Position numbers and translations under genes: made by a program. From the IMG/VR virus record IMGVR_UViG_3300031951_000001, positions 62,001 through 126,000 of that record: a stretch of DNA of 64,000 nt, one strand, 5' to 3'. The notes beneath the pieces were generated by a model. It was not told the DNA's origin and did not search any database. It worked only from the letters and a program-made list of their open reading frames with translations. Below are positions 2,607 through 54,505 of this stretch, piece by piece; position 1 is the first letter of the stretch; each line of letters starts with the position of its first letter.

Positions 2607-3179
2607 ATGAAACAAATAAAAACACTTTTGTTGTTTTTGTTGGTCATGATTGTTTCAGGACAAGACCAAAAGATAGACATATGCGAAGACGAATCTAAAA
2701 CAGAATATACGTATTCGATAGAGTCTAATACACCAAATACAACATTTTATTGGTACGTAGATGGTATCTATCATTTTGGACAAACCCTGACCGTCAATTG
2801 GGAAACTTATTCTCCTGGAGTCCATACAATTAAAGTTTATGGAAAAAGTGATGGATGTAGGTCAAACCCGATGGAGTTTAAAGTTTTCATTGGGGAATGT
2901 TCTTCAATCTATATTCCAAATGCTTTTACTCCAAACGATGATGGGTTTAACGATACTTGGTTTCCCCAAGGAACAGGATGGGAAAGTATAGAAGTATTAG
3001 TATTTGACAGATGGGGGGTACTTGTATTTAAGTCAGTTGACCCAAAAGGACAATGGATTGGTAACTTTAGAGGTGGAGAATATTACGTTCAAAATGATGT
3101 CTACGAATATAAGGTTACTTGGAAGGGTATTGACCGAGAACCTGAAATAATTTTTGGTCATGTTACAGTTGTTAGGTAA
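2607..3179 (+). CDS. secreted protein with gliding-motility-associated (T9SS type B) C-terminal domain
   Basis: Signal peptide; IYIPNAFTPNDDGFND..VFDRWG..W.G..VY.Y..GHVTVVR signature. Confidence 0.85.
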   Translation: MKQIKTLLLFLLVMIVSGQDQKIDICEDESKTEYTYSIESNTPNTTFYWYVDGIYHFGQTLTVNWETYSPGVHTIKVYGKSDGCRSNPMEFKVFIGECSSIYIPNAFTPNDDGFNDTWFPQGTGWESIEVLVFDRWGVLVFKSVDPKGQWIGNFRGGEYYVQNDVYEYKVTWKGIDREPEIIFGHVTVVR

Positions 3180-3986: not shown

Positions 3987-4049
3987 GAAAAATACCATTC
4001 TATTTTTATCACATAACAAATATTATTTTAACTAAAATATTTAATATTT

Positions 4050-4868
4050 TTACGCGACGTTAATCTCAAAGTTATCAACTTTGGCAACCGCGTTAGCTCT
4101 ATGTGAGCTAGTACCTCCTCCCGCATTTATATCGGCAAAATATTCCGCAGCCTCTTTTTTGTCTGTAAAGTTTGGGAAAGTTGATGCGGATTTACCTTTA
4201 GTAAAAAATGCGATTGCGATTTTTGCTGCGATTTCAGGGTCATTAACTAAATCTGGATTTTTAACTAACTCATCACCCATACCAATCATTCTACTATATT
4301 TTTCATAATTTTTAATACCGGTTAGTTGGTTGAACCCTCTACCTCTATACGTGAAACCATCGTCTCCACCTTGATTACCAACTGTTTTAGCGTAAACTAC
4401 ATTGAAAAATTTTCTCATATCACTTTTTAATGCGTTTAATTCACTATCACTATATCCGGCCACTCTTTTACCGAATATTTTTCTAATTCTACTATTGGCC
4501 GTGGTTGCGTATGAAACCTCACTTTTAGGTTTGAAATTACATTCCTTATTAATAACTGATAAAATACCTACTTGAGTATAGGGGTTTGTTATACCCGCCT
4601 CATTCATTTTATCTATTAAAAAATTTATATTTTTTTGTTGTTCAGAATCAAAATTACCAACAATTTTCACATCACCGTTTACAGGTGAACTTTTAGTGGT
4701 GCCTGTTTCCGATGGTTTTTCTTCTGATGAGCTTGGGGTTTTGGAGGGTTTCTCAAACATTTTCTTTATTGATAAAGCAAGTGCCTTTTCAATAAAAGAT
4801 TGCTCATTTATATTGTGTAGTTTTTTTATATGACTTTTTTCTTCTTCGGTAATTAATAATTTTCTCAT
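4050..4868 (-). CDS. glycoside hydrolase family 19 (chitinase/lysozyme-like) lytic enzyme
   Basis: DGFTYRGRGFNQLTGIKNY and NPDLV..P..AA motifs; N-terminal leader MRKLLITEEEKSHIKKLH. Confidence 0.8.
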   Translation of the reverse strand: MRKLLITEEEKSHIKKLHNINEQSFIEKALALSIKKMFEKPSKTPSSSEEKPSETGTTKSSPVNGDVKIVGNFDSEQQKNINFLIDKMNEAGITNPYTQVGILSVINKECNFKPKSEVSYATTANSRIRKIFGKRVAGYSDSELNALKSDMRKFFNVVYAKTVGNQGGDDGFTYRGRGFNQLTGIKNYEKYSRMIGMGDELVKNPDLVNDPEIAAKIAIAFFTKGKSASTFPNFTDKKEAAEYFADINAGGGTSSHRANAVAKVDNFEINVA

Positions 4869-4914
4869 TACAACCTTTTTATTATAAATATATTTATAGT
4901 GATAAAGTGATACA

Positions 4915-5304
4915 ATGAAAGTTACGGTAGTGCATCAGGATAAAGACAGAGCCTCAAGAAATAAAGAGGTGTGCGATAGATTTATAAAGTTTTTATTTTC
5001 ACAATATCCTCTAAAACATGACTTAAAGATATTTTTCCTTAAAAATCGTATAGGTGAAATGAGTACCGGCTCCAGAAGTGAAAATCACGTTATTAAAGTT
5101 CTGACCAAAAATAGAATCAATAGAGATATTCTTCGCACATTGGCACACGAGTGGGTACATGAATATCAGATGGATATTATGAAAAGGGAAAGAGGTCAAG
5201 ATATTGGTGGTAAGAATGAAAATGAAGCTAACGCTCTATCCGGCTCATTAATAAAAAAGTTCGAGAAAAAATTCCCGAACTTTGAAGATACGATGTATGA
5301 ATAG
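4915..5304 (+). CDS. HExxH zincin-like metalloprotein
   Basis: LRTLAHEWVHEYQ..ENEANA. Confidence 0.65.
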   Translation: MKVTVVHQDKDRASRNKEVCDRFIKFLFSQYPLKHDLKIFFLKNRIGEMSTGSRSENHVIKVLTKNRINRDILRTLAHEWVHEYQMDIMKRERGQDIGGKNENEANALSGSLIKKFEKKFPNFEDTMYE

Positions 5305-5308
5305 AATG

Positions 5309-5734
5309 TTAGTCGATACTAACAACTTCTAAATCAAAAATCAATTTTTTACCCGCCAAAGGATGATTAGCATCAATTTTAACGGTAGATTCATTAATTT
5401 CAACAATACGAACATTAATTGGTCCATTTGGACCCATTCCCTGCAGCATATCACCAACTGAAACATTTTCCGGAACCTGCTCTTTTGCAATTTCACTAAC
5501 CAACATTTCGTTTACATCACCATAAGCATCCTCACAAGGAATTTCAATGGTTCTTTTTTCGCCAATTGTCATACCAATCAAACCGCTTTCAAAACCTTTG
5601 ATTAGTTGTCCTTGACCTAATTTAGCTTTCAATGGCTCACGACCTTCAGTAAGTGAAGTATCGAAAACTGAACCATCTTCCAATCGACCGGTGTAGTTAA
5701 CCGATACTGAATCTGAATCTTGTATTGTTTTCAT
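5309..5734 (-). CDS. FKBP-type peptidyl-prolyl isomerase (SlyD/FkpB-like, no His-rich tail)
   Basis: VNYTGRLEDGSVFDTS, GQLIKGFE, DANHPLAGKKLIFDLEV. Confidence 0.92.
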   Translation of the reverse strand: MKTIQDSDSVSVNYTGRLEDGSVFDTSLTEGREPLKAKLGQGQLIKGFESGLIGMTIGEKRTIEIPCEDAYGDVNEMLVSEIAKEQVPENVSVGDMLQGMGPNGPINVRIVEINESTVKIDANHPLAGKKLIFDLEVVSID

Positions 5735-5891
5735 ATTGTATTTTTTTAAATAATAAGGTATTTTTTATATTAAACAAACTTTTTATTTGAAATTTTTTAA
5801 TAAAAAAAACTTGTGTGATGACTAAATCGTAGTATATTTGTAAAAATAACATATTTATAATATATAATAATTTTCTAATTCATTTGGGGGA

Positions 5892-6071
5892 ATGACAAGC
5901 GAAAAAATAATGGAAGAAATGTTTCATATTGCCTACAGACACGGTCTTATGAACGAATTACATGAAAGAGCAGGACAAATTCAAAAAGAATATAGTGCTC
6001 CTATTACAACCGCAGTACCACTTGCTTTTCAAGCTATGAGAAAAGAGGGGTTACTTCAGGATGAAGAGTAA
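5892..6071 (+). CDS. small hypothetical protein (59 aa, not in ORF track)
   Basis: MTSEKIMEEMFHIAYRHG..LLQDEE translated by hand; TATATTTG and TATTTAT motifs upstream. Confidence 0.5.
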   Translation: MTSEKIMEEMFHIAYRHGLMNELHERAGQIQKEYSAPITTAVPLAFQAMRKEGLLQDEE

Positions 6072-6346
6072 TTTTCGAGTAAATCATAGGATGATTGAAT
6101 AATCAGTCGTTCTCCGTCAAATCCGGTGTATTTCCAGCATTCTTCAATGACATAATCTAATGAAGTAATTTGAGATTCCTCAAATAATTTAATGTCTGAT
6201 AGATACAACTTACAATCAACCATATAAGATTTTTTGGTTGTACAGTATTTTACGGATAAGACATCAACAATACTGTCTTTACCAAACAATAGCTCAATAT
6301 CTTTGTAGTAAAGATAGTTTAAAAGTATAATGAGGCACCCTTTCAT
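6056..6346 (-). CDS. hypothetical protein
   Basis: 96-aa ORF. Confidence 0.55.
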   Translation of the reverse strand: MKGCLIILLNYLYYKDIELLFGKDSIVDVLSVKYCTTKKSYMVDCKLYLSDIKLFEESQITSLDYVIEECWKYTGFDGERLIIQSSYDLLENYSSS

Positions 6347-6395
6347 CTTTTTTTATAATTATAATAGTAAATAAACCTAACTTAAACAAAAAATA

Positions 6396-6638
6396 ATGAT
6401 AGAATCCACTATTACTCTATTAAAAAAACTTGACAAACGTAAAAAAATTGAAAAAGACTTCGAATGGGTGGTAAAAATCGTGTCATCTAGTGAAAATTTT
6501 AACCATATTGTGATTAGTAATAGGCTTTTTGAGGCTTTTACTCACAAATGGAGAAATCATATGACTGAAAACCAATTAAAGGAGTATAGTTTTACATTTG
6601 AACAAGAAAAAATGATAACAATAGGACATTTTTTGTAG
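6396..6638 (+). CDS. hypothetical protein
   Basis: 80-aa ORF with A-rich upstream region. Confidence 0.55.
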   Translation: MIESTITLLKKLDKRKKIEKDFEWVVKIVSSSENFNHIVISNRLFEAFTHKWRNHMTENQLKEYSFTFEQEKMITIGHFL

Positions 6639-6697
6639 AAAAAGTTGATTTTTAAGTGTTTTAGGACTATTTTTCTCAAAATTACAATATTTATCAA

Positions 6698-6765
6698 AAC
6701 TATCACTCTCATCAGAGAGCCTATATATAGAAAAAGGGACTTAATTTTTGTTAAGTCCCTTTTTT
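6698..6765 (+). ncRNA. candidate small RNA
   Basis: TATTTAT at 6688-6694, hairpin CTCTC-ATCA-GAGAG, then terminator GGGACTTAA/TTAAGTCCC plus T-run; no ATG in between. Confidence 0.35.
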
Positions 6766-6794
6766 CATTAAAAAACTTGCCTTATCTTTGTAAC

Positions 6795-7034
6795 ATGAAA
6801 GCAAAACTAACATTTGATTTAGATGACATCGATGATAAGATGGCTCACGAGCGTTGTGTTAAGTCAACCGACATGGCATTAGTTCTTTGGGAGATTATGA
6901 CCAATTCATACCGTGGTTTAACCAACGGATATGACGAAGATGACTCATATCACAAAGGAGTTGATGCGGTTTATGAAAAACTTCGTGAATTGATGGAAGA
7001 ACATGACATAAATCCACATAATTTAATACGATGA
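6795..7034 (+). CDS. hypothetical protein
   Basis: Start reassigned to the ATG 4 nt after TATCTTTG; begins MKAKLTFDL. Confidence 0.65.
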   Translation: MKAKLTFDLDDIDDKMAHERCVKSTDMALVLWEIMTNSYRGLTNGYDEDDSYHKGVDAVYEKLRELMEEHDINPHNLIR

Positions 7035-7079
7035 GAAAATTTTGGAATAAATTAGTTAAATTTTTTAAAACAGTATCAG

Positions 7080-7625
7080 ATGGTATCGATGAAACACAGT
7101 ATAAAAATGGTTGGGGAAAGCTTTAAAGACATAAAATACGCTGTTAAGCGATTTATTCGAAAAATTAAGAACGTTTTTCGATGGCTTCCCACAATTTGGA
7201 AGGATGAGGACTATGATAGTCACTTCATTAATGAAATATTAATCAAAAAACTCGAACATACCCGAGATTTCTTCTTGTCTGATAATACTCACATCCTTAA
7301 TGCTAAAGAGGTTGCTGCCGAAATTCAGGAGGCAATTGACCGTCTTCACATGACCCGTGATAGTTGGGAGTTTTATGAAGACCCGGCCATGGAGGAGATT
7401 CAGAAGAAGTGGGGGAAGAGTACATTCAATTGGATTCCGACAAATGATGGTACCGGCTCAATGTTTATGGAGATTGAACATGAGAATGTAAAAACTCCCG
7501 AGGATGAGGAACAATACTCAACCGAGTTTAGAGCCACAATGAAACAAGCTCGTAAGGATTATAGAAAAGATAAAAAAGAAGCGTATAAATTCATCGCGAA
7601 GAATATTGATAAATGGTGGGATTAA
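7080..7625 (+). CDS. hypothetical protein
   Basis: 181-aa ORF ending WWD; start uncertain. Confidence 0.65.
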   Translation: MVSMKHSIKMVGESFKDIKYAVKRFIRKIKNVFRWLPTIWKDEDYDSHFINEILIKKLEHTRDFFLSDNTHILNAKEVAAEIQEAIDRLHMTRDSWEFYEDPAMEEIQKKWGKSTFNWIPTNDGTGSMFMEIEHENVKTPEDEEQYSTEFRATMKQARKDYRKDKKEAYKFIAKNIDKWWD

Positions 7626-7636
7626 AAATTAATAAT

Positions 7637-8158
7637 ATGGAATGGTATATTGTAAGAGCACAAGCTAATCGGGAACGTAAAGTTTCAGAACGACTTCTTA
7701 AAGAAGGTGAAAAAGGGGAATTATCTGGAGTATTGGGTAGAGTTGTTGTACCGTTGGAGAAGGTATTTGCCACAAAAAACGGGAAAAAGACACAACGAGA
7801 AAAAGTATTGTTTCCTGGTTATGTATTTGTTGAGACCTCGGCAATTGGGGAACTCAAACAGGTTGTTAAAAAGATTGATGGAGCCACAGGACTATTGTCT
7901 GACAGAGCCGGTAACATCCAAGTTATTCCCGAAAATGAAGTTAGTCGTATGATTGGACTTCACGAAGAGAATAAGGCGAAAGAATTCACCGATATTTTCA
8001 GTATTGGTGATGAAGTTACGGTCGCTGAAGGCCCATTCGCATCATTCAAGGGGAATATTGAACATATTGACAAAGAAAGAGGTAAAATTAAGGTAAATGT
8101 CCTTATTTTTGGTAGACCAACATCAGTTGAACTCGAAGACACACAAATAAGAAAATGA
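7637..8158 (+). CDS. nusG: transcription termination/antitermination factor NusG
   Basis: WYIVRAQANRERKV, FPGYVFVE, KOW motif GDEVTVAEGPFASFKG, IFGRPTSVEL. Confidence 0.93.
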   Translation: MEWYIVRAQANRERKVSERLLKEGEKGELSGVLGRVVVPLEKVFATKNGKKTQREKVLFPGYVFVETSAIGELKQVVKKIDGATGLLSDRAGNIQVIPENEVSRMIGLHEENKAKEFTDIFSIGDEVTVAEGPFASFKGNIEHIDKERGKIKVNVLIFGRPTSVELEDTQIRK

Positions 8159-8841
8159 AGATAACATTCATCAGCGATACTCACAATAAGCACAAACAAA
8201 TACAGGATTTACCTGGCGGTGACTTGCTTATTCACGCTGGTGATATATCAAGTATGGGTCACAAACACGAGATTCAACAATTCTGTAAGTGGTTTGATGG
8301 CTTGACTAATTATTCTGCGGTTGTCTTCATTGCCGGTAATCACGACTTTGGATTTGAGAAACGACCCGAAGAAACTATGGAAATTGTTAATTCATACAAG
8401 TGGATTACATACCTTCAAGACAATCATTTGTCCTTTGGTCCTGATATGGAAACCCTTGTTAAAATTTATGGTAGTCCATGGCAACCTGAGTTTCATAATT
8501 GGGCGTTTAATTTACCAAAGAATGGATGGGAACTTGAGCAGAAGTGGAACGACATTCCTGAGGATACGGACATCTTGATTACTCACGGACCTGCGTTTGG
8601 TATCTTGGATACTGTGGTGGGTCAGTATGATAATCTTGGTTGTGAATTACTAACCAAGCGGATTAAGAAAATTAAACCCAAAATTCATGTCTGCGGACAT
8701 ATACACTCAGGGTATGGTTATGTTTTTGACGGAGATACTCACTTCATAAATGCATCAGTGCTGGATGAACAGTATCAATACACCCAAAAACCTCTAACAG
8801 TAGAGTGGGACCCTGTAACGAATAACTTGGAGTTTATTTAA
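8155..8841 (+). CDS. calcineurin-like metallophosphoesterase
   Basis: SDTH, HAGD, AGNHD, THGP and CGHIH motifs. Confidence 0.9.
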   Translation: MKITFISDTHNKHKQIQDLPGGDLLIHAGDISSMGHKHEIQQFCKWFDGLTNYSAVVFIAGNHDFGFEKRPEETMEIVNSYKWITYLQDNHLSFGPDMETLVKIYGSPWQPEFHNWAFNLPKNGWELEQKWNDIPEDTDILITHGPAFGILDTVVGQYDNLGCELLTKRIKKIKPKIHVCGHIHSGYGYVFDGDTHFINASVLDEQYQYTQKPLTVEWDPVTNNLEFI

Positions 8842-8845
8842 TTTG

Positions 8846-8872
8846 AAACCCCTCAGAAATGAGGGGTTTTTT
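8846..8872 (+). terminator. intrinsic terminator
   Basis: CCCCTCA-GAAA-TGAGGGG followed by T6. Confidence 0.85.
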
Positions 8873-8935
8873 ATTGTCGGTTAATTATAGTAAATCAAAA
8901 AATTTTATAAAGAGTATAATGATATTTATCAATAT

Positions 8936-10528
8936 ATGGATAAAAAAATAAAAATTTTAATTTTATCGTCATTGGTCATAATGTCGGTATTTTTCATGGT
9001 TAAAACTGCGGTTTTAATCGAAATTATATCTAGCTCAAAATTAACAAGAGGAACGGAATATGTTTGTTTTTTATTTTTTATTCCTGTTTTTTACAATTTA
9101 ATTAGACACTACATTAAAACTAATAGGTTATATAATCAGTTTAAAGAATTTGAAAATTTTGTTGATACCTCAGTACTGGTTAGTAAGGCTGATAAGAATG
9201 GTAAGATAACATATGTTAACCAAAAATTCAGTGAAGTGTCAGGGTGGAGTTTAGAAGACGCCGCAGGTAAAGACCACCGAATAGTTAACTCAGGATTTCA
9301 TCCCAAAGAAATGTGGGAGGAAATGTATAAAACAACAATCAAAGATAAAAAAATATGGAATGCTGTCGTAACTAACAAAGCAAAGGATGGTCATCTATAT
9401 TGGGTTGATTCATATATTAAAGCCGAATTTGAAGAAAATGGAGACCTAAAAGGTTTTATGTCAATAAGATATGATGTTTCAGAAGTTAAGAAAAAAGAAC
9501 TTGAGATTAGAAACAGAATGAATGCCATCAATCAATCTAATGCGGTTATTGAGTTTGATTTGAGTGGTAATATAATGTATGCCAATAAAAATTTCTGTGA
9601 TACTATGGGATATACTATGGAAGAAATTGTGGGAAAACATCATAGTATATTTTTAAATGAGGAGTATTCAAAGTCACAGGAGTATAAAGAATTTTGGGAT
9701 ACTTTAAGAAGTGGTGATTTCATATCTGCTCAATTTATGAGAATTAAAAAGAATGGTGATGAAATTTGGTTACAAGCCACATATAACCCAATCTTTGATA
9801 ATGATGGTAAAGTTATTCGAATTATGAAAATTGCGATTGATATTACTGACAAAGTTTTACAATCCCAAGAGATAGAAAAAAAGAATACTTATTTGGAACA
9901 TGCCGCAAAAATATTGAGACACGACATGCACTCGGGTATTAACACTTACATGCCGAGGGGGTTAAGTTCTTTGGAGAGAAGATTAAAAACTGAAGACATT
10001 GAGAATTTAAAAATTGAAGCTCCGATTAAAATGATTAAGGAGGGATTAAGACACTCACAAAAAGTATATAAGGGTGTTTATGAATTTACCAATTTGGTTA
10101 AAAAGGATGTTGTGTTAAATAAAGCTGAATGTAATTTAAGAGACATATTAAATGATTATCTATCATCAACCGCATATCATAGTCAGGTTATTATTGAAGA
10201 ATTACCAACCATAGAAGTTAATGAAGCATTATTCTGTACTGCGGTAGATAACTTAATTAGGAATGGATTGAAGTACAATGATTCTGAATCAAAATTTGTA
10301 AAAATATACATGGAAGGTGATGAGTTAATGGTTCAGGACAATGGACGAGGTATAACTCAAGAAGATTTCGACCACTTATCAAAACCATACACAAGAAAAG
10401 AAGGACAAAAAGAGTCAGGAACTGGACTCGGATTAAACATATGTGTGGCGATATTACAAGAACACAAGTTTTTGGTAAGATGCGAGAAAAATGAGATAGG
10501 AACTAAACTGAAAATAAAAATAAAATAA
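8936..10528 (+). CDS. membrane-anchored PAS-PAS sensor histidine kinase
   Basis: Two N-terminal TM segments; two PAS/PAC domains; H-box LRHDMH, N-box NLIRNGLKY, G1 DNGRGI, G2 GTGLGL. Confidence 0.9.
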   Translation: MDKKIKILILSSLVIMSVFFMVKTAVLIEIISSSKLTRGTEYVCFLFFIPVFYNLIRHYIKTNRLYNQFKEFENFVDTSVLVSKADKNGKITYVNQKFSEVSGWSLEDAAGKDHRIVNSGFHPKEMWEEMYKTTIKDKKIWNAVVTNKAKDGHLYWVDSYIKAEFEENGDLKGFMSIRYDVSEVKKKELEIRNRMNAINQSNAVIEFDLSGNIMYANKNFCDTMGYTMEEIVGKHHSIFLNEEYSKSQEYKEFWDTLRSGDFISAQFMRIKKNGDEIWLQATYNPIFDNDGKVIRIMKIAIDITDKVLQSQEIEKKNTYLEHAAKILRHDMHSGINTYMPRGLSSLERRLKTEDIENLKIEAPIKMIKEGLRHSQKVYKGVYEFTNLVKKDVVLNKAECNLRDILNDYLSSTAYHSQVIIEELPTIEVNEALFCTAVDNLIRNGLKYNDSESKFVKIYMEGDELMVQDNGRGITQEDFDHLSKPYTRKEGQKESGTGLGLNICVAILQEHKFLVRCEKNEIGTKLKIKIK

Positions 10529-10536
10529 AAAAAACT

Positions 10537-10968
10537 ATGATTGATTCAATTTTACTGGTAGATGACGAGGATTTATTCCATTTAGTGTTTGAAGATAGTT
10601 GTTCACTTCTTGATATAACATTATCTTTAAAAAGTTTAAATAGTTCAGATGAGGCAGCCAAATTATTTGAGAAATGGCAATCAAACAGTGCCGACAAACC
10701 TGAATGTGTGTTTGTTGATTTGAATATCATTGGGTCTTCCTTTGATGGTATTGAACTTATTAGAAAGATTAACTTTGAATACGGAAATAATGTTGTGATT
10801 GGAATCATTTCATCATCAAACGAACCTGAAGAACAGGCAAAGGCAATTCAATCTGGTGCTCAATTTTGGATTATAAAATCAGACGAGATTGAACCACGAT
10901 TAGAGGAGTTTAAGAAGGATTACGAAGGATATAAAAATAGAACAGCCCCATTTAAGATTTACAAATGA
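10537..10968 (+). CDS. single-domain response regulator (receiver)
   Basis: ILLVDDED, phosphoacceptor VFVDLN, ISSS, WIIKS. Confidence 0.88.
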   Translation: MIDSILLVDDEDLFHLVFEDSCSLLDITLSLKSLNSSDEAAKLFEKWQSNSADKPECVFVDLNIIGSSFDGIELIRKINFEYGNNVVIGIISSSNEPEEQAKAIQSGAQFWIIKSDEIEPRLEEFKKDYEGYKNRTAPFKIYK

Positions 10969-11648
10969 TAAAATTTACCCCTGAAATAAAAAAAGAATTA
11001 ATTACCTTATCTGAAACAAAAAATTTATTTTTGGAAGGAAACATTGTTAAGGTAATTGATTCTGATGGGGATGATAATTTTAAAGAATACCTTAAAAAGT
11101 GTGGGGAAAGGGATACCGCAAATCGTAAGAAAAGGCTCGATATTACCAAACAAATTCAGACACAAAACAAAGAGCTATCTGACTTAAATGACGAGAATCA
11201 AAAAATATTAGAGGAGTTACAGTCAACCCTAAAAGAAGTTGAGGACTCCAAGATGACATTTGAGGTTCAAAACAGAGAATTAAACGAGTGGAAAGCCGAT
11301 AATATAAGATTAACCGAAGAACTAACAGTTGAGATGGTTAAATCCGAACAGGCGAGAGTGGATGCCGAAAAGGCAAAACAGAATGCTGAAAATGACTTGG
11401 ATGTACTTCAAAAGAAAACTCAATTTGAGTTAATCAATACAATTGTTAGAGTGGCATTATTTGTAATAATCGGTGTTGGTATTACTACCACGGCATTATA
11501 TACTGTTGCGTTATTTACAAACCAAGACACCCAAATAATAGGTTCAACTTGGAGTAATATGTTTGGTATCTTACTTACTAATGCGTTTAGTATAGTCGGA
11601 ACAATAATGGGTGTTAAATACGCATCAGAAAAACCAAAGAAGAATTAG
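10965..11648 (+). CDS. coiled-coil protein with two C-terminal TM helices
   Basis: Long heptad region then two hydrophobic segments; ATGA overlap with the receiver gene. Confidence 0.75.
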   Translation: MIKFTPEIKKELITLSETKNLFLEGNIVKVIDSDGDDNFKEYLKKCGERDTANRKKRLDITKQIQTQNKELSDLNDENQKILEELQSTLKEVEDSKMTFEVQNRELNEWKADNIRLTEELTVEMVKSEQARVDAEKAKQNAENDLDVLQKKTQFELINTIVRVALFVIIGVGITTTALYTVALFTNQDTQIIGSTWSNMFGILLTNAFSIVGTIMGVKYASEKPKKN

Positions 11649-11995
11649 TCATTAGTCATATAATCTTGGAAAATTCTTTTCTCAACAAGATTACCTTCCA
11701 TATCATACATCCACCCTTCGTATTTTCTTCCCTTAACATATTTGACTTGTGATATTTTGATACCGAATGGTGAATATGTAACCCATATTCCATCTTTTCT
11801 ACCCTCATCATAATGACCCACAGAAAATATACTACCATTATCGTAATATGCGGTCCACTCACCGGTTTTTAGATTATTTGATAGATGACCTTTCTGTTCG
11901 ATTTGACCCTTCTCATTTCTAAATAAAACTTCTTCTACTTGTGAATAACCTACAACCTGTAGGAACATAAACACCAAAAAAACAATCTGTCTCAT
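11645..11995 (-). CDS. secreted MORN-variant repeat (YwqK-like) protein
   Basis: Signal peptide; GEWTAYYDNG and GRKDGIWVTY repeats. Confidence 0.7.
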   Translation of the reverse strand: MRQIVFLVFMFLQVVGYSQVEEVLFRNEKGQIEQKGHLSNNLKTGEWTAYYDNGSIFSVGHYDEGRKDGIWVTYSPFGIKISQVKYVKGRKYEGWMYDMEGNLVEKRIFQDYMTND

Positions 11996-12086
11996 AATAT
12001 TAAGGATATATTATAAATAGATTAAGGAAATGTTAAGTAATATTAACAATTTTGACTATCGAAAAATTTAACATACATATTAGTGT

Positions 12087-12326
12087 ATGAAAACAATTCT
12101 TATATCAGTATTTTTTAGAATCATTTTTTTAGATTCACAAACGGACGAAACTTTGACAGGTGTTAAAGTTGAAACTAATCAGGGTGTATATTTTTCTAAT
12201 TTGGATGGTGAAGTTTTTATACCAACAGAGGAAGAAGTTCTATCTGTAAGTTATGTTTCTTACGAAACAAAAAATGGTGTCACCCTTTCGAATGACACCA
12301 TTATGTCTTTGAGTCAAATTCAGTAA
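12087..12326 (+). CDS. small carboxypeptidase-regulatory-like domain protein
   Basis: DSQTDETLTGVKV..SNLDG..VSYVSYE pattern. Confidence 0.55.
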   Translation: MKTILISVFFRIIFLDSQTDETLTGVKVETNQGVYFSNLDGEVFIPTEEEVLSVSYVSYETKNGVTLSNDTIMSLSQIQ

Positions 12327-12329
12327 TTT

Positions 12330-12497
12330 TTACTTTTTGAAAGAATTTTTATACTCCTCGGTACCAAATTTTTTCCATTCCCAATTCCCGTAAAAGTCGG
12401 GATTTTCAACTGAACATTCACCTGAAGATTTGTATTCGGATAAGAACTTATCCGACATTTCTTTGGTGTATCTATTTTTGACCTCAAAATTTTTCAT
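12330..12497 (-). CDS. small hypothetical protein (55 aa, not in ORF track)
   Basis: MKNFEVKNRY..FYGNWEWKKFG; abuts the stop of the upstream gene. Confidence 0.5.
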   Translation of the reverse strand: MKNFEVKNRYTKEMSDKFLSEYKSSGECSVENPDFYGNWEWKKFGTEEYKNSFKK

Positions 12498-13355
12498 TCA
12501 AAACTTATTTACATCACCGTAATTCATGTGTAATTCATCGTGTTCGGCTTTCATCATTTCGTAAGCTCGAGCCATTCGAGTCATTCCGATACCGCCACCA
12601 AATCTTTTGAAGAATTTGTGAGACAAGAATTCTTCCAATTCCTTCTCAACCCTTTCTTTACCAAACAATTCAAACAATTTGGCCGAATAACCACCATTTT
12701 CAATAGTATAGAACATTTCTCTCATTTCATCAACATCACAACTTCTTTCGGCCGAACCAATTGTTTCTTGACCATAAAGAATAACATCCACTTTGTTGAA
12801 TTTATCTCCCTCACCCGACTTCATATTCCAGAATGGGTTTGTTCTAACGGGGAAATTCTGTAATGACACTACACTACCTTTTTCATTCCACATTCTTGTT
12901 TCGTGCTCGTTCTCCAAAATCGGTACACCACCATATTCTTCACAAACATCGTCATAATTCACTTCAACAGGTGAATCAAAACCTAAAAACGCAAGTAATT
13001 CAGATTCTAATTTAAGTAATTCCTTCATACCACCCTTTGACTCGAACTCAAACATTGGGAAGATTAATTCGTGACGACCTGGGATTGGGTCTTTTTCTTG
13101 TCTGTACGATGTTGAGATACAGAACACACCTGGCCATTCAGGATTTTGTAACAATTCATACTCTAACCACATTTGACCTGTTTGTGGTAATGGCCAAATT
13201 TGACCTTGGTACTCAAACGTTGTGATTGAGTGTGGATTCTCACATGCTGCGAGAATTGATAATCTTGATTGGGTCGGAACCTCAAGAAAACCTTTGTTTA
13301 GAAAAAAGGTCCTCATCTTTTGGACCAACTCGTGATAAACTTTTGTGTTTTTCAT
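12498..13355 (-). CDS. stand-alone class IIb aaRS-like catalytic domain (AsnRS paralog; possible asparagine synthetase)
   Basis: Motif 1 FFLNKGFLEVPT, LPQTGQ, motif 2 SYRQE..GRH..FPMFEFE, ETIGSAER, motif 3 GGGIGMTR; no anticodon-binding OB domain. Confidence 0.8.
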   Translation of the reverse strand: MKNTKVYHELVQKMRTFFLNKGFLEVPTQSRLSILAACENPHSITTFEYQGQIWPLPQTGQMWLEYELLQNPEWPGVFCISTSYRQEKDPIPGRHELIFPMFEFESKGGMKELLKLESELLAFLGFDSPVEVNYDDVCEEYGGVPILENEHETRMWNEKGSVVSLQNFPVRTNPFWNMKSGEGDKFNKVDVILYGQETIGSAERSCDVDEMREMFYTIENGGYSAKLFELFGKERVEKELEEFLSHKFFKRFGGGIGMTRMARAYEMMKAEHDELHMNYGDVNKF

Positions 13356-13368
13356 ATTACTTTAGGGT

Positions 13369-13393
13369 AAAAAAAAACCTCCCGAAGGAGGTT
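13369..13393 (-). terminator. leader (attenuator) terminator 13 nt upstream of the AsnRS-like start codon
   Basis: Minus strand AACCTCC-TTCG-GGAGGTT followed by T7; no long upstream minus-strand gene to terminate. Confidence 0.75.
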
Positions 13394-13397
13394 ACGT

Positions 13398-13427
13398 TTA
13401 TTTATTATTTATTAAATTCTTGTTCAT
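13398..13427 (-). CDS. putative Asn-rich leader peptide MNKNLINNK
   Basis: ATG AAC AAG AAT TTA ATA AAT AAT AAA TAA; starts 6 nt after a TATTTAT motif and ends 4 nt before the terminator stem. Confidence 0.5.
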   Translation of the reverse strand: MNKNLINNK

Positions 13428-13499
13428 TTTGAAATAAATACGAGATAAAGTTGAAAAAATAAAGTAATCACTTAAAATTTTTTTTGAGTATTTATTAGT

Positions 13500-14540
13500 A
13501 TGAGAGTTAGATTATCGGAAGAACAATTAAAAAAGTTGATAAAAGAGGATTTGGGAGTGTCCAGAGCGGCATTAGCATATACCAATTTAATCTATTCTAA
13601 ATTAGAATCTGAAGTAAAAGAATTTTTAGACACAAAAAAAAGTGGCAAATACAAATTTACGATTTCAGTAGATGAAATGTCATATATCTATCAATCTAGT
13701 ATGGATGACTTTATCGAATTACCTATTGAACAGATTGAAATTACTCTAACTTTTGTGAGCTCTCCCAGAAAAAAAGCCAATGTTCCATTCACAACTGGTG
13801 GAGCGGCCCAATCAATACAAAAAGAATATCTAAAAGGGTCTTATTTAAAAGAACCATCATTTGAATTACCAAAATATATTTTAGAGGAAGTTGACCAAAC
13901 TATTGTTGCCAGAATGGACCTGTCTGTAGAAATAAGAAGTTCTTATGATGACAGTATGAGTGAATCGGTATTATTTGATTTTAGAGATACGATTACACAT
14001 GAATGTAACCACTTGTATGAATTCTACAAAAGAGCTGAAAGGGGTGCTAAACAGATGAATGTAACTTTAAGTTGGGCTGGTAACAAAAATGTTAATGTAA
14101 AAAGGGAAATTTTCAGTGTTTGGCAAAATTTTATGGATTATGTATATAATTCAGAACCGTATGAGGTTAATGCCAAAGTACAAGAAGCATTTAGTTTGAG
14201 GTCTAGAATGCCTTTTGAAGAATTCAAAAATACAAAGTATTGGAGAGGGGCTAATAACCTAAAGAATTTCAATTCAGATGTGTTTATTGAAACATTATTA
14301 TCTAAAATAGGTGAATTATCACCAGGTAAAGAAGTCAGTATTTTCAATAATCTATATAAGTGGTTTTTAACTGATTACTACAAATGGATGAAACTTCACA
14401 ATGAAAAACCAGCAAGATTCATCGATAACTCAAAAAATTTGGTAGATTTGATTAGTAAATTCCAACCAAGAATCAATAAAGCGGGTGAAACCTTATTAAA
14501 AAAATATATGAGGTTGTATGCTTTAGAACCGGAAATCTAA
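13500..14540 (+). CDS. HExxH zincin-like protein with N-terminal LSEEQL leader
   Basis: THECNHLYE..YEVNA; begins MRVRLSEEQLKKLIKE. Confidence 0.65.
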   Translation: MRVRLSEEQLKKLIKEDLGVSRAALAYTNLIYSKLESEVKEFLDTKKSGKYKFTISVDEMSYIYQSSMDDFIELPIEQIEITLTFVSSPRKKANVPFTTGGAAQSIQKEYLKGSYLKEPSFELPKYILEEVDQTIVARMDLSVEIRSSYDDSMSESVLFDFRDTITHECNHLYEFYKRAERGAKQMNVTLSWAGNKNVNVKREIFSVWQNFMDYVYNSEPYEVNAKVQEAFSLRSRMPFEEFKNTKYWRGANNLKNFNSDVFIETLLSKIGELSPGKEVSIFNNLYKWFLTDYYKWMKLHNEKPARFIDNSKNLVDLISKFQPRINKAGETLLKKYMRLYALEPEI

Positions 14541-14657: not shown

Positions 14658-16523
14658 ATGGGTAAAATTATAGGTATTGATTTAGGAACAACAAATTCGT
14701 GTGTTGCCGTTATGGAAAGCGGCGAACCTGTTGTGATTACAAACAGTGAAGGAAAAAGAACCACCCCTTCAATTGTAGGTTTTGCGAATGGTGGTGAGAG
14801 AAAGATTGGTGACCCGGCTAAACGTCAATCAGTTACTAATCCTGACAAAACAGTTTATTCTATCAAACGTTTCATGGGAGGCAGTTTTGATGAGAGTAAA
14901 AAAGAAATTAAACGAGTACCTTACAAGGTAGTTAAAGGTGACGGTAATACTCCTCGTGTCCAAATTGAAGACAGGAAGTATTCACCACAAGAAATCTCGG
15001 CAATGGTTCTCCAAAAGATGAAACAAACTGCTGAAGATTATTTGGGCGAAACTGTAACAGAGGCGGTTATCACGGTACCGGCGTATTTCAACGACGCTCA
15101 ACGTCAGGCGACTAAAGAAGCTGGTGAAATCGCGGGTCTTACCGTTAGACGTATAATTAACGAACCAACTGCGGCGGCACTTGCTTACGGTCTTGACAAA
15201 CAAGGTAAAGACATGAAAGTTGTGGTGTTCGACTGTGGTGGTGGTACTCACGACGTATCAGTCCTTGAATTGGGTGATGGTGTATTTGAAGTATTGGCAA
15301 CTGATGGTGACACTCACCTCGGTGGTGATGACTTCGATAACGTAATCATTGACTGGCTCGTTAAAGAATTCCAAGATGAAAACGGACTTGATTTGACCAA
15401 AGACCCAATGGCACTTCAACGTCTCCGTGAAGGAGCTGAAAAGGCAAAAATTGAGTTGTCAACTTCACCATCAACAGAAATCAACCTACCTTACATTATG
15501 CCGGTAGATGGTGTTCCAAAACACCTTGTTCGCACAATGACAAAGGCAAAGTTTGAGCAACTTGTTGACAGTTTGGTACAACGTACAATCGCACCGTGTA
15601 AGTCAGCTCTCAAAAATGCCGGTTTGAAACCTGCGGACATTGATGAAATTATCTTGGTTGGAGGCTCAACTCGTATTCCGGCAATCCAAGAAGCGGTTAA
15701 AAAATTCTTCGGTAAAGAACCATCAAAAGGAGTTAATCCTGACGAAGTTGTGGCACTCGGTGCAGCAATTCAGGGAGGTGTACTCGCAGGGGATGTTAAA
15801 GATGTATTGTTACTTGATGTGACTCCACTATCACTTGGTATTGAAACTCAAGGTGGTGTATTCACAAAACTCATCGAGGCAAACACAACAATCCCAACTA
15901 AAAAGTCCCAAGTGTTCTCAACGGCGGTTGATAATCAACCATCAGTAGAGATTCACGTTCTACAAGGGGAGAGAGCAATGGCTCAAGACAACCGAACAAT
16001 TGGTCGTTTCATTTTGGACGGACTACCACCAGCAATGAGAGGTGTTCCACAAGTTGAAGTTACTTTTGACATCGATGCCAACGGTATTATCAATGTATCG
16101 GCGATGGATAAGGCAACCAACAAACAACAATCAATCCGTATTGAATCATCGTCAGGTCTTTCAAAAGAAGAAATCGAAAAGATGAAACAAGATGCGGAAA
16201 TGAACGCAGAGGCGGACAAAAAATCACGAGAAGATGCCGACGCTATTAACCAAGCGGATTCTTTGGTATTCCAATCCGAAAAAACCATGAAAGATTTGGA
16301 GGAGAAGATGACCGAAGAACAAAAAACCCAACTTGCTGAAGCAATATCAGAATTGAAGACATCAATCGCTGAAAAGGATATTGAAAAGGTAAGAAACGGT
16401 ACTGGTAAATTGGCGTTGGTCGCTCAAACGATTACTCAAGGAATTTATAGTCAAGGAGACGAAGGTCAAGTTAGCGACCCTGAAGTTTCAGACGTAGATT
16501 TTGAAGAAGTAAAACCAAGTTAA
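14658..16523 (+). CDS. dnaK: molecular chaperone DnaK (Hsp70)
   Basis: [50 protein letters not shown]. Confidence 0.98.
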
Positions 16524-54320: not shown

Positions 54321-54505
54321 AAGTCTTTGTTTTTCATTTTCTGAACATACTTGGCCTTTTTCAACATTTTTCTTTTTCTAACCGACTTCTTTTCATACTC
54401 CTTTCTTTCGACGAGTTGACTTGACTGTCGGGTCTTAATCACTTTACTTTTGAGTAACTTTAATGCTCTCTCAATACCGTTTTTATCTACTTTGACAATT
54501 AACAT
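54317..54505 (-). CDS. rpsU: phage-encoded ribosomal protein bS21
   Basis: IERALKLLKSKV..RKEYEKKSVRKR pattern; 62 aa, basic. Confidence 0.85.
   Translation of the reverse strand: MLIVKVDKNGIERALKLLKSKVIKTRQSSQLVERKEYEKKSVRKRKMLKKAKYVQKMKNKDF

What the first reader, a model, noticed from the sequence alone, without database searches (positions are those of the whole stretch)
8936..11648. Phage-encoded two-component cassette with no DNA-binding output
Seen: an operon of a 2TM-PAS-PAS histidine kinase, a stand-alone receiver and a translationally coupled coiled-coil/2TM protein, insulated by an upstream terminator and preceded by TATTTAT. Catalytic His, Asp and Lys appear intact. Known: PAS domains often bind flavin or heme and sense redox or oxygen; complete two-component systems are uncommon in phages. 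Inference: late in infection the phage senses host energy state and signals to a membrane effector, for example to time lysis.
Basis: partly seen in the sequence, partly recalled or inferred. Interest (0 to 1): 0.7.

Follow-up and report, generated by a model that had tools for sequence, protein, structure and literature searches.

The report
Phage two-component system wired to lysis
A 322-kb freshwater phage, and thousands of its relatives, carry their own sensor kinase and receiver protein, which appear to signal to a phage-only membrane protein that usually sits next to the cell-wall-digesting enzymes; this suggests the phage uses its own signalling pathway to decide when to burst the host.

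Summary
The window holds three co-directional genes behind a real terminator and a recurrent ATATTTAT motif:
- a membrane-anchored PAS-PAS histidine kinase, 8936-10528;
- a 143-aa stand-alone receiver, 10537-10968;
- a coiled-coil protein ending in a two-helix membrane hairpin (ORF3), 10965-11648, joined to the receiver gene by an ATGA overlap.

The window lies in a complete 322-kb virus genome that also encodes ribosomal protein bS21; the host is probably Bacteroidota.

The trio is not a recent host capture. It keeps the same gene order in 74 distinct phage loci. The receiver is 72-100% identical among phages but only 21-36% identical to the best matches in sampled genomes of a Flavobacteriales bin's phylum (presumably Bacteroidota).

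The ORF3 hairpin is a compact family seen only on phage-like contigs. Its input end is interchangeable:
- an N-domain, present whenever a receiver gene is adjacent;
- PAS, PAS-PAS or GAF fused directly, in phage genomes that have no kinase and no receiver.

In all these forms the hairpin gene lies beside lysis genes. Five different lysin types are involved, and in places a holin and spanin-like genes. A lysin is the commonest neighbour of the trio (46 of 72 loci) and is often the next gene after ORF3.

Best reading: a phage phosphorelay controls a holin-like lysis protein after translation. The signal sensed, the direction of control and receiver-ORF3 binding are not shown.

The parts
8845..8870 (+). 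Intrinsic terminator that ends the upstream NusG-like and phosphoesterase genes and insulates the cassette.
   Evidence: 11-bp stem with 5 G-C pairs, then a T-run. Conserved in close relatives, with a compensatory C:G to G:C change in the stem.
8883..8895 (+). Conserved upstream box AATTATAGTAAAT. Its role is unknown. A similar AGTAAATAG box occurs upstream of the kinase gene in many relatives.
   Evidence: Largely conserved (9 of 13 bases invariant) in the five closest loci. Related boxes appear in divergent loci.
8922..8929 (+). ATATTTAT promoter-like motif ending 6 nt before the kinase ATG. It implies a very short or absent leader.
   Evidence: Present in the same place in most related loci even though their flanks differ. 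Genome-wide it starts at -13..-11 of 34 genes, against about 0.4 expected, including the prohead protease and bS21 genes. It also lies upstream of both lysin genes.
8936..10528 (+). Sensor histidine kinase, 530 aa. It has an N-terminal membrane anchor (TM about 13-31, and probably about 42-58), PAS1 at about 75-190, PAS2 at about 200-305, a divergent DHp with H-box RH(329)D, and a catalytic ATPase domain at 433-529.
   Evidence: Pfam, hydropathy, conservation of the DHp and CA domains in 75 phage kinases, matches to the catalytic domains of solved kinases CpxA, QseC and HK853.
10537..10968 (+). Stand-alone receiver (single-domain response regulator), 143 aa. The predicted phospho-acceptor is D61; there is a conserved 28-aa C-terminal extension.
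   Evidence: Pfam Response_reg above the cut-off. Invariant D9, D10, E11, D61, S92-94, K114; mean column identity 88% across 34 phages and mean pairwise identity 84%. The nearest solved relative is a Bacteroidota-type single-domain receiver, 3ILH.
10965..11648 (+). ORF3, the proposed output protein, 227 aa. It has a cytoplasmic N-domain (1-70, proposed receiver-docking part), a heptad-registered coiled coil (about 37-157), a TM hairpin (TM1 about 158-182, a 12-aa outer loop, TM2 about 195-220 with a small/polar stripe N198-G201-T205-S209-G212-G216), and a K-rich C-tail.
   Evidence: Alignment A1. AF2 model. Region identities: TM2 90%, N-domain 52%. Coiled-coil lengths all differ by multiples of 7. 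The family was seen only on phage or phage-like contigs. Sensor-fused variants and lysis-gene neighbours.
4050..4868 (-). GH19-type endolysin, 272 aa. This is the lysin that lies directly beside the trio in many related phages. Here it is displaced about 4 kb upstream on the other strand.
   Evidence: Pfam Glyco_hydro_19 and PHROG endolysin. Matches the solved chain 4OK7, deposited as 'Endolysin', at E 4e-13. No TM segment. ATATTTAT lies upstream.

Best explanation
The three genes form a phage-owned phosphorelay whose output is a membrane protein rather than a DNA-binding protein.

Proposed mechanism, step by step:
1. The membrane-anchored kinase reads an unknown cytoplasmic cue through its two PAS domains.
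2. It autophosphorylates, most likely on H329, and passes the phosphate to D61 of the stand-alone receiver.
3. The receiver acts on the cytoplasmic N-domain of ORF3.
4. ORF3 is a rigid coiled-coil rod ending in a highly conserved two-helix membrane hairpin. The hairpin is a holin-like lysis element: either the hole-former itself or a partner (antiholin) that gates another holin.
5. The state of the relay therefore advances or delays the moment at which the soluble GH19 endolysin reaches the cell wall.

This would be a phage-encoded counterpart of lysis inhibition. Related phages add a second kinase with a periplasmic sensor, so outside and inside cues could converge on one receiver.

Shown by computation:
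- the domain make-up and intact catalytic motifs;
- deep conservation of the trio and its order in phages;
- a hairpin family seen only on phage or phage-like contigs, with swappable inputs;
- mutually exclusive 'relay' and 'sensor-fused' forms;
- heptad-exact coiled-coil lengths;
- repeated adjacency to lysis genes.

Inferred: phosphotransfer, receiver-ORF3 contact, hole formation, the direction of control, the signal, and late timing.
For: 1. Real and conserved.
- HK-RR-ORF3 in the same order in essentially all of 185 fetched viral loci, giving 74 distinct complete trios, while the flanks vary.
- The ATGA or one-base RR/ORF3 overlap is kept.
- RR pairwise identity is 72-100% among phages, but only 21-36% to the best hits in 301 sampled genomes of a Flavobacteriales bin's phylum, presumably Bacteroidota.
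- The ORF3 profile found only 8 contigs among one genome each of 185,579 species. All are metagenome bins of eight different phyla, and most carry trio or fusion genes.

2. ORF3 is the output.
- Its TM2 (90% mean identity) and the RR (84%) are the most conserved parts. The sensor part of the kinase varies in length and make-up: 353-728 aa, GAF, one to three PAS.
- The hairpin family has 114 representatives among 1.84 billion proteins and is always C-terminal. It occurs behind the ORF3 N-domain, behind one PAS, behind PAS-PAS or behind GAF.
- Four 95-100% complete genomes carrying the PAS-PAS fusion have no REC and no kinase.
- Distant N-domain forms again follow a REC-like gene.

3. Mechanical coupling.
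- The spacing between the RKKRL and DLDxxQKK motifs is 48, 55, 62, 83 or 90 residues, all equal to 6 mod 7, in 216 of 217 sequences.

4. Lysis link.
- A lysin is the commonest neighbour of the trio: 46 of 72 distinct loci within 4 kb, 29 within 100 bp, and 12 directly after ORF3 on the same strand. In L127 the gap is 12 nt.
- The L193 fusion sits among a GH19 endolysin, a PG_binding_1 lysin and a Phage_holin_4_1 holin.
- The GAF fusion is followed by a 2-TM protein, spanin-like genes, a GH19 protein and a glucosaminidase.
- A distant PAS fusion is followed by Amidase_2. Another PAS fusion overlaps a Peptidase_M15_3 gene.

5. Holin-like features and own genome.
- Two TMs with both ends in the cytoplasm, a small/polar stripe in TM2 and a charged C-tail.
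- The window's GH19 enzyme has no TM or signal peptide and so would need a hole-former.
- No Phage_holin_4_1 homologue was found in the genome, and only about six small proteins have two or more TMs.

6. Shared promoter-like motif with the lysin genes, the prohead protease and bS21.

7. Small RNA-library contigs from five metatranscriptomes cover the RR, the HK/RR junction and ORF3 at 90-99% identity. This is weak evidence.
Against: - No experiment of any kind exists; all evidence is comparative.
- In this very window the trio is not next to a lysin. The GH19 gene is 4 kb away on the other strand, and the second lysin is 59 kb away.
- 26 of 72 trio loci show no lysin within 4 kb, although several of those contigs are cut short.
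- The many trio loci are related phages, so adjacency to GH19 may be partly inherited synteny.
- ORF3, at 227 aa with a long cytoplasmic rod, is unlike typical small holins.
- L193 already has a recognisable holin, so there the hairpin protein may be a regulator rather than the hole-former.
- The co-fold of RR with ORF3 did not reach the mark (0.25 against 0.32; 'no answer').
- Fold searches found no known holin or channel.
- The receiver is conserved over nearly its whole surface, more than the ORF3 N-domain it is supposed to bind. This hints at further partners, possibly host proteins.
- Pfam sees no HisKA-type domain, so the phospho-acceptor histidine is assigned by motif only.
- The RNA evidence cannot exclude DNA carry-over, and the runs were selected for holding these words.
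Confidence: 0.55

Rival explanations
1. The relay does control the ORF3 hairpin, but the hairpin is not a lysis element. It would be a regulated ion-conducting or membrane-perturbing protein used for something else, such as adjusting proton-motive force, superinfection exclusion or envelope remodelling. It would then sit near lysins only because phage envelope genes cluster.
For: - No homology or fold match to any known holin.
- Unusual size and a long cytoplasmic rod.
- In this window and its closest relatives the trio lies among host-like auxiliary genes (NusG-like, phosphoesterase, DnaK, FKBP), not lysis genes.
- L193 has a separate holin.
Against: - Adjacency to five different lysin families in independent architectures.
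- The hairpin gene often takes the exact holin position, directly before the endolysin.
- A spanin-like gene set follows the GAF fusion.
Confidence: 0.2
2. The receiver's real target is a host protein, for example a host kinase, a transcription or translation factor, or a motility component. ORF3 would be only a membrane scaffold that holds the kinase and receiver in place, or an unrelated co-transcribed gene.
For: - The receiver is conserved over almost its whole surface (84% mean pairwise identity; residues 56-115 at 92%), while the ORF3 N-domain is only 52%.
- The co-fold gave no support.
- Some distant RR+ORF3-like pairs have no adjacent kinase, so host kinases might feed them.
Against: - A scaffold would not need a 90%-conserved TM2 with invariant polar residues.
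- Sensor-hairpin fusions exist in genomes that have no receiver at all. The hairpin therefore receives sensory input in its own right.
- The ORF3 N-domain is present exactly where a receiver gene is adjacent.
- The overlapping RR/ORF3 reading frames are conserved.
Confidence: 0.12
3. The cassette is a passenger: a host-derived two-component system picked up by a jumbo phage, with no role in infection.
For: - PAS kinases and single-domain receivers are common in Bacteroidota.
- The nearest solved receiver is a bacterial one.
- The window is rich in other host-like genes.
Against: - Hundreds of viral contigs keep the trio in order with intact catalytic residues.
- The best bacterial receiver matches are 21-36% identical.
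- ORF3 was not found in cellular genomes, apart from 8 contigs in metagenome bins of eight different phyla that look like misassigned phage DNA.
- The cassette carries the phage's own promoter-like motif.
Confidence: 0.03

Closest known systems
Canonical bacterial two-component systems with single-domain receivers (CheA-CheY-FliM logic; Rcp1- or DivK-type stand-alone receivers; structure 3ILH)
   Same: A kinase with PAS inputs, an ATPase domain and an H-box. A receiver with the full acidic pocket, the Ser/Thr and the Lys. Output through protein-protein contact instead of DNA binding.
   Different: - Encoded by a phage and conserved there.
- The DHp domain is not recognised by Pfam.
- The proposed target is a membrane hairpin protein, seen only on phage-like contigs, with no known homologue.
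- Several kinases (cytoplasmic and periplasmic sensors) share one receiver in relatives.
Phage T4 lysis inhibition: holin T with antiholins RI and RIII (established knowledge, not tested here)
   Same: A large (about 220 aa) holin-type protein with a soluble regulatory domain. Partner proteins change the timing of hole formation in response to a cue sensed during infection. Relatives here even have a periplasmic sensor, as RI is periplasmic.
   Different: - No sequence or topology similarity. T has one TM and a periplasmic domain; ORF3 has a cytoplasmic rod and two TMs.
- Here the cue would travel through a His-Asp phosphorelay or a directly fused PAS or GAF sensor.
Class II holins and holin/antiholin pairs (lambda S105/S107, phage 21 S68/S71; established knowledge)
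   Same: Two TM helices with both ends in the cytoplasm, a charged C-terminal tail, small/polar helix faces, and a gene placed just before the endolysin.
   Different: - ORF3 carries about 155 extra cytoplasmic residues (N-domain plus coiled coil).
- There is no dual-start motif.
- No Pfam or PHROG holin family matches.
LytSR-LrgAB/CidAB: a bacterial two-component system controlling holin-like proteins (established knowledge; seen among the hits)
   Same: A two-component system linked to holin-like membrane proteins and to cell lysis.
   Different: - LytR is a DNA-binding regulator acting on transcription in the host's own genome.
- Here the receiver has no DNA-binding domain, the system is viral, and control would be post-translational.
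Phage sensing systems for life-cycle decisions (arbitrium AimR/AimP; VP882 VqmA; established knowledge)
   Same: A phage encodes its own sensor to tune a life-cycle decision.
   Different: Those are one-component transcription regulators deciding between lysis and lysogeny. This is a His-Asp relay (or a sensor-fused membrane protein) placed in or near the lysis cassette.

Membership tests
Two-component sensor histidine kinase | GHKL-type catalytic ATPase domain with N, G1 and G2 boxes | tested here: met
   Pfam HATPase_c, 51 bits against a cut-off of 26.4, residues 433-529. NLIRNGLKYN, DNGRG and GTGLGL are conserved in 75 phage kinases. Matches the CpxA, QseC and HK853 catalytic domains.
Two-component sensor histidine kinase | Dimerisation/phosphotransfer (DHp, HisKA-type) domain with the phospho-acceptor histidine | tested here: inconclusive
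   No Pfam DHp family matches, even at E 10 on the isolated segment. The segment is helical-looking and carries an invariant H-box-like RH(329)DMHSGIN; H322 and H332 are also invariant. The assignment of H329 is by motif only.
Two-component sensor histidine kinase | Autophosphorylation and phosphotransfer to a cognate receiver | not testable with these tools
   Needs biochemistry.
Response regulator receiver (CheY-like) | Receiver fold with acidic pocket (DD), phospho-acceptor Asp, conserved Ser/Thr and Lys | tested here: met
   Pfam Response_reg, 35.3 bits against a cut-off of 30.2. D9, D10, E11, D61, S92-94 and K114 are invariant in 34 sequences. Profile match to receiver 3ILH.
Response regulator receiver (CheY-like) | Output (effector) domain, usually DNA-binding | tested here: not met
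Only 143 aa. There is no second Pfam domain, just a conserved 28-aa tail.
Holin / antiholin (functional class) | Small phage membrane protein with one or more TM helices and a charged C-terminal tail | tested here: met
   Two TM segments and a K-rich tail, KYASEKPKKN. However, the protein is 227 aa, larger than most holins.
Holin / antiholin (functional class) | Gene located in the lysis cassette, typically just upstream of the endolysin | tested here: inconclusive
   Met in many relatives and in the sensor-fused forms. Not met in this window, where the GH19 gene is 4 kb away on the opposite strand.
Holin / antiholin (functional class) | Homology to a described holin family | tested here: not met
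   No Pfam or PHROG hit. No structural match in PDB, BFVD or the AlphaFold DB clusters.
Holin / antiholin (functional class) | Forms or gates membrane lesions that release the endolysin at a set time | not testable with these tools
   Needs expression and complementation assays.

The most novel reading that the evidence does not exclude
The ORF3 hairpin is a previously undescribed signalling output module, seen only on phage-like contigs: a sensor-gated holin or holin regulator. Phages would drive it in one of two ways. Some use their own His-Asp phosphorelay, fed by cytoplasmic PAS or GAF kinases and, in some lineages, by a periplasm-sensing kinase. Others fuse PAS or GAF sensors straight onto it. 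Lysis timing would then be computed post-translationally from cues inside and outside the infected cell. This would be the first viral two-component system with a defined non-transcriptional target, and a phosphorelay analogue of T4 lysis inhibition, widespread in freshwater Bacteroidota phages.
Probability: 0.45. Interest if true: 0.88.

Novelty: new variant of a known kind. Interest (0 to 1): 0.8.

Why it matters
Lysis timing sets phage fitness and burst size. Known controls are holin clocks, antiholins and, in T4, lysis inhibition.

A phage-owned phosphorelay that feeds sensory information into a holin-like protein would be a new layer of control. It would also give a function to viral two-component genes, which so far have none.

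The module is abundant. There are more than 7,000 ORF3 homologues in metagenomes and hundreds of viral contigs, up to 322 kb, mostly from lakes and rivers. It could therefore influence when Bacteroidota cells are lysed and carbon is released in fresh waters.

The swappable-input architecture (N-domain with receiver, or PAS, PAS-PAS or GAF fused directly) makes the hypothesis directly testable. It also offers a compact sensor-to-membrane switch for engineering.

Tried and rejected
- DNA search of GenBank phages with window 8000-12000: no match. No cultured relative was found there.
- Co-fold of RR with ORF3, using paired alignments: score 0.25, below the mark of 0.32. The controls were not run. 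This counts as no evidence either way.
- Fold searches with the ORF3 model in PDB, BFVD and the AlphaFold DB clusters returned only a family member (A0A6J5PRT3, uncharacterised) and chance coiled-coil or hairpin matches. The ESM Atlas gave only virus clusters without names.
- Pfam on the isolated DHp segment: no HisKA-type hit.
- Rfam on 4000-14000: nothing. The sigma-70 consensus scan was not above shuffles (34 found, 37 expected), so host-type promoters were not used as evidence.
- Literature: no paper in the searchable library describes a phage two-component system tied to a holin. The jumbo-phage survey of Iyer et al. describes only a different, kinase-independent cREC receiver. The bS21-phage paper and its supplements do not mention these genes.
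- Homologues of the small 2-TM protein and the holin of L193 were sought in the own genome and not found.
- Recent host capture was considered and rejected.
- Treating the 8 hits in bacterial bins as cellular homologues was considered and rejected. They lie in eight unrelated phyla, and most carry the phage trio or fusion.
- A LOV- or heme-type PAS was considered from the sequence. I saw no diagnostic motif and made no formal test, so I make no claim about the ligand.
- RNA-library contigs cover parts of the cassette. The runs were chosen for holding these words and DNA carry-over cannot be excluded, so I do not count this as proof of expression or of timing.
- The L284 145-aa ORF could not be compared because it has in-frame stops under code 11.
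Full report
**1. What is in the window**

Window 8936-11648 holds three co-directional ORFs. All three were scanned against Pfam and PHROGs.

Kinase, 8936-10528, 530 aa:
- Two PAS stretches (PAS_3 93.8 bits; best stretch 213-299) and HATPase_c at residues 433-529.
- One strong N-terminal hydrophobic segment at 13-31. A second, weaker one lies at about 42-58 and is strong in relatives.
- No Pfam HisKA-type domain, even when the DHp segment is scanned alone at E 10.
- The segment carries LEHAAKILRHDMHSGINTY, invariant in 75 phage kinases, together with the N, G1 and G2 boxes.
- The catalytic half matches solved CpxA, QseC and HK853 domains.
- H329 (RHD) fits the H-box pattern best. H322 and H332 are also invariant, so the acceptor is assigned by motif, not shown.

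Receiver, 10537-10968, 143 aa:
- A receiver domain and nothing else (35.3 bits, cut-off 30.2).
- D9, D10, E11, D61, S92-94 and K114 are invariant across 34 diverse phage homologues.
- The nearest solved relative is the single-domain receiver 3ILH.

ORF3, 10965-11648, 227 aa:
- No Pfam or PHROG match.
- AlphaFold2 with a 34-sequence alignment gives a small N-domain, one helix from 37 to 184 and a return helix 190-220, mean pLDDT 84.
- Two TM segments, 160-178 and 199-217.

Signals around the genes:
- The receiver stop and ORF3 start overlap as ATGA.
- The terminator at 8845-8870 is real by the scan. Close relatives carry a compensatory C:G to G:C change in the stem.
- TATTTAT lies at 8923-8929.

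**2. Where it sits**

The window is bases 62001-126000 of a 322,372-bp IMG/VR virus record, CheckV 100%. It has one receiver match and one HATPase_c match.

Other features of the genome and window:
- The genome encodes ribosomal protein bS21. A prohead protease lies beside it.
- The window has four tRNAs.
- It also encodes a type IX secretion CHU_C-domain protein, PKD proteins, MORN_2, FKBP, a NusG-like protein, a metallophosphoesterase, DnaK and an AsnA/class-II-synthetase-like gene.

This fits the bS21-encoding freshwater phages, up to 331 kb, predicted to infect Bacteroidota (PMC9723584). That paper and its supplements do not mention these genes.

**3. Conservation**

Scans of IMG/VR found relatives of each protein:

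| Protein | Stretches confirmed | Identity to the window's protein, best loci listed |
|---|---|---|
| Kinase | 28 (27 loci) | 55-100% |
| ORF3 | 334 | 58-100% |
| Receiver | 477 | 84-100% |

- In essentially all of the 185 loci the order is kinase-receiver-ORF3, while the flanks differ. There are 74 distinct complete trios.
- The word-indexed protein search found 7,372 ORF3 homologues, none with an informative name.
- Mean pairwise identity in the same 34 phages: receiver 84% (residues 56-115, 92%), ORF3 TM2 90%, membrane-proximal segment 75%, ORF3 N-domain 52%, coiled coil 49%.
- The kinase DHp and catalytic domains are well conserved. The sensor part is not: lengths run from 353 to 728 aa, with GAF or one to three PAS domains.
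- About 20 loci carry an extra pair between the first kinase and the receiver. One is a 205-aa protein with a signal peptide. The other is a second kinase with a signal peptide, a periplasmic domain of about 170 aa, one TM and the same H-box.
- In 301 sampled genomes of the phylum of a Flavobacteriales bin, the best receiver matches are 21-36% identical.
- The ORF3 profile found 8 contigs among 185,579 species genomes. All are metagenome bins of eight unrelated phyla, and most carry the trio or a fusion.

The trio is therefore an old, selected phage module, not a recent capture.

**4. ORF3 is the output**

A profile of the last 92 residues of ORF3 was scored against 1.84 billion representative proteins. 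It found 114 proteins, with the match always at the C-terminus.

The hairpin follows one of several N-terminal parts:
- the ORF3-type N-domain (motif LEGN...RKKRL);
- one PAS domain (P0139, P0223, P0232);
- PAS-PAS (P0149; L193:5341-6456, 371 aa);
- GAF (P0123).

The PAS-PAS fusion occurs on at least 180 viral stretches. Four genomes that carry it, 95-100% complete and 116-160 kb long, have no receiver and no histidine-kinase ATPase.

Distant members with the N-domain again follow a receiver-like gene:
- L279 has a 226-aa mini-kinase, a 163-aa receiver (hhalign 95.7%) and an ORF3-like gene.
- L292 has a 143-aa receiver-like gene (77%) overlapping an ORF3-like gene.

So the N-domain is present where a receiver is present. 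Where a sensor is fused directly, the N-domain, receiver and kinase are all absent. This is the pattern expected if the hairpin is the effector and the N-domain is the receiver's docking site.

The coiled coil between the RKKRL and DLDxxQKK motifs is 48, 55, 62, 83 or 90 residues long in 216 of 217 distinct sequences. All of these equal 6 mod 7. At least four independent length classes differ by whole heptads. This argues for a register-sensitive rod coupling the input end to the hairpin.

**5. The link to lysis**

I clustered all ORFs within 4 kb of 72 distinct trios. The commonest neighbour family is a set of lysins, in 46 loci. The next families are DnaK (20), the second kinase (20) and the phosphoesterase (18).

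The lysins are of two kinds:
- PG_binding_1 plus GH19, about 275 aa;
- a 200-aa domain that elsewhere is fused to PG_binding_1.

Twenty-nine loci have a lysin within 100 bp of the trio. There are two recurrent layouts:
- directly after ORF3 on the same strand (12 loci; in L127 the gap is 12 nt);
- directly before the kinase gene, divergently transcribed (56-77 bp).

Independent architectures show the same association:

| Hairpin form | Locus | Lysis-type neighbours |
|---|---|---|
| PAS-PAS fusion | L193 | GH19 endolysin, PG_binding_1 lysin, Phage_holin_4_1 holin |
| GAF fusion | L276 | 2-TM 78-aa protein, N-terminal-TM coiled-coil protein, lipoprotein, GH19, glucosaminidase |
| Distant PAS fusion | L277 | Amidase_2 |
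| PAS fusion P0139 | contig listed without DNA; partly L281 | Peptidase_M15_3, overlapping the hairpin gene's stop |

In the PAS-PAS group, about half of 85 loci show one of the L193 lysins within 6 kb.

In the window itself:
- The GH19 gene (4050-4868, minus strand) matches the solved chain 4OK7, deposited as 'Endolysin', at E 4e-13.
- It has no TM or signal peptide, so it would need a hole-former.
- No Phage_holin_4_1 homologue is present.
- Only about six small proteins in the whole genome have two or more TMs, ORF3 among them.

ORF3 has the class II holin topology (both ends in the cytoplasm) and a K-rich tail. TM2 has a small/polar stripe, N198-G201-T205-S209-G212-G216, all invariant. Such stripes are typical of homo-oligomeric channel formers (established knowledge).

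**6. Expression signals**

- ATATTTAT stands 5-7 nt before the kinase ATG in most related loci, although the upstream flanks differ.
- In this genome TATTTAT starts at -13..-11 of 34 of about 347 predicted genes (about 0.4 expected). A second peak lies at -25..-21.
- Genes with the motif include the kinase gene, the prohead protease, bS21 and a 737-aa peptidase/PG-binding protein. The motif also lies upstream of both lysin genes.
- bS21 was reported as co-expressed with structural genes late in infection (PMC9723584). A late class is therefore plausible but not shown.
- Small contigs from five RNA libraries cover the receiver gene, the kinase/receiver junction (for example 10422-10641 with 4 differences) and ORF3. 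The runs were selected for these words and DNA carry-over cannot be excluded.

**7. Mechanism proposed, and its limits**

Proposed sequence:
1. An unknown cytoplasmic cue is read by the PAS domains.
2. The kinase phosphorylates D61 of the receiver.
3. The receiver binds the ORF3 N-domain.
4. A change is passed down the coiled coil.
5. The hairpin is released to oligomerise or is restrained from doing so, or its hold on another holin changes.
6. The endolysin reaches the wall earlier or later.

Steps 2-6 are inferred.

Counter-points:
- The trio is not adjacent to a lysin in this window.
- Part of the adjacency may be inherited synteny.
- ORF3 is atypically large for a holin.
- L193 has its own holin.
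- The co-fold gave no answer.
- Fold searches were blank.
- The receiver's near-total surface conservation suggests additional partners.

**8. Comparison with what is known**

It works like a two-component system with a CheY-type protein-protein output. In purpose it resembles T4 lysis inhibition or holin/antiholin control.

- It passes the membership tests for the kinase ATPase domain and for the receiver.
- It is inconclusive for a HisKA-type DHp domain.
- It fails homology to any holin family.

I therefore file it as a two-component system with a new kind of output, not as a member of a known holin family.

No paper in the searchable library describes such a system.

**9. Verdict**

- Observation: confirmed.
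- Interpretation: partly supported. The membrane-effector and lysis idea is strengthened; the energy-sensing idea is unsupported.
- Novelty: new variant of a known kind.
- Interest: 0.8.

Noticed in passing
whole genome; in the window e.g. 8922-8929, upstream of 13500, 20078, 43710, 55086, 56104 and of the minus-strand genes ending at 21687 and 54505: The motif (A)TATTTAT sits at a fixed distance, starting at -13..-11, before 34 of about 347 start codons (about 0.4 expected). A second peak lies at -25..-21. This looks like a phage promoter giving leaderless or near-leaderless mRNAs. It precedes the prohead protease, bS21 and the lysin genes, and also arrays of small genes that each have their own terminator.
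   Followed up: partly
window 54317-54505 (-), 55086-55811 (+): A ribosomal protein bS21 gene lies next to a head maturation protease. This places the genome among the freshwater bS21 jumbo phages of Bacteroidota described in PMC9723584.
   Followed up: partly
L095:3613-5558; L010:7587-9601: About 20 related phages insert a secreted 205-aa protein and a second kinase between the first kinase and the receiver. The second kinase has a signal peptide, a periplasmic domain of about 170 aa, one TM and the same H-box. Two different sensors would then feed one receiver.
   Followed up: partly
genome 12159-12767 (-), outside the window; L127:3716-4324 (-); L193:6747-7556: A 200-aa domain with no Pfam family and no match to solved structures is fused to PG_binding_1 in some phages and often flanks the trio. 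It is probably an undescribed peptidoglycan hydrolase domain (phrog_3000).
   Followed up: partly
window 7613-8158, 14658-16523, 12498-13355 (-), 5309-5734 (-), 2607-3179: The neighbourhood is rich in host-like genes: a NusG-like factor, a full-length DnaK/Hsp70, an AsnA/class II synthetase-like protein, an FKBP isomerase, and a protein with a type IX secretion CHU_C sorting domain next to PKD-domain proteins. The last points to a Bacteroidota host.
   Followed up: no
L102:9050-9499: A cREC_REC (cyclic-phosphate-processing receiver) gene lies about 2.4 kb downstream of the trio in six loci. This is the kinase-independent receiver type described for jumbo phages by Iyer et al. 2021.
   Followed up: no
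L284:4216-5211; L285: A distant ORF3-like gene (P0210) lies in a crAss-like contig beside the muzzle protein gene, preceded by a 145-aa gene called in the source record. Under code 11 that upstream ORF has two in-frame stops, which suggests stop-codon recoding in that phage.
   Followed up: no
window 43710-45923: A 737-aa protein combines an unknown N-terminal domain (phrog_36119), a metallopeptidase-like region and a PG-binding-like region, and carries the ATATTTAT motif. It may be a virion-associated or second lytic enzyme.
   Followed up: no
window 11645-11995 (-) versus 10965-11648 (+): ORF3 and the convergent MORN-repeat gene (which has a signal-peptide-like N-terminus) overlap by 4 nt at their 3' ends. 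No terminator was detected between them.
   Followed up: no
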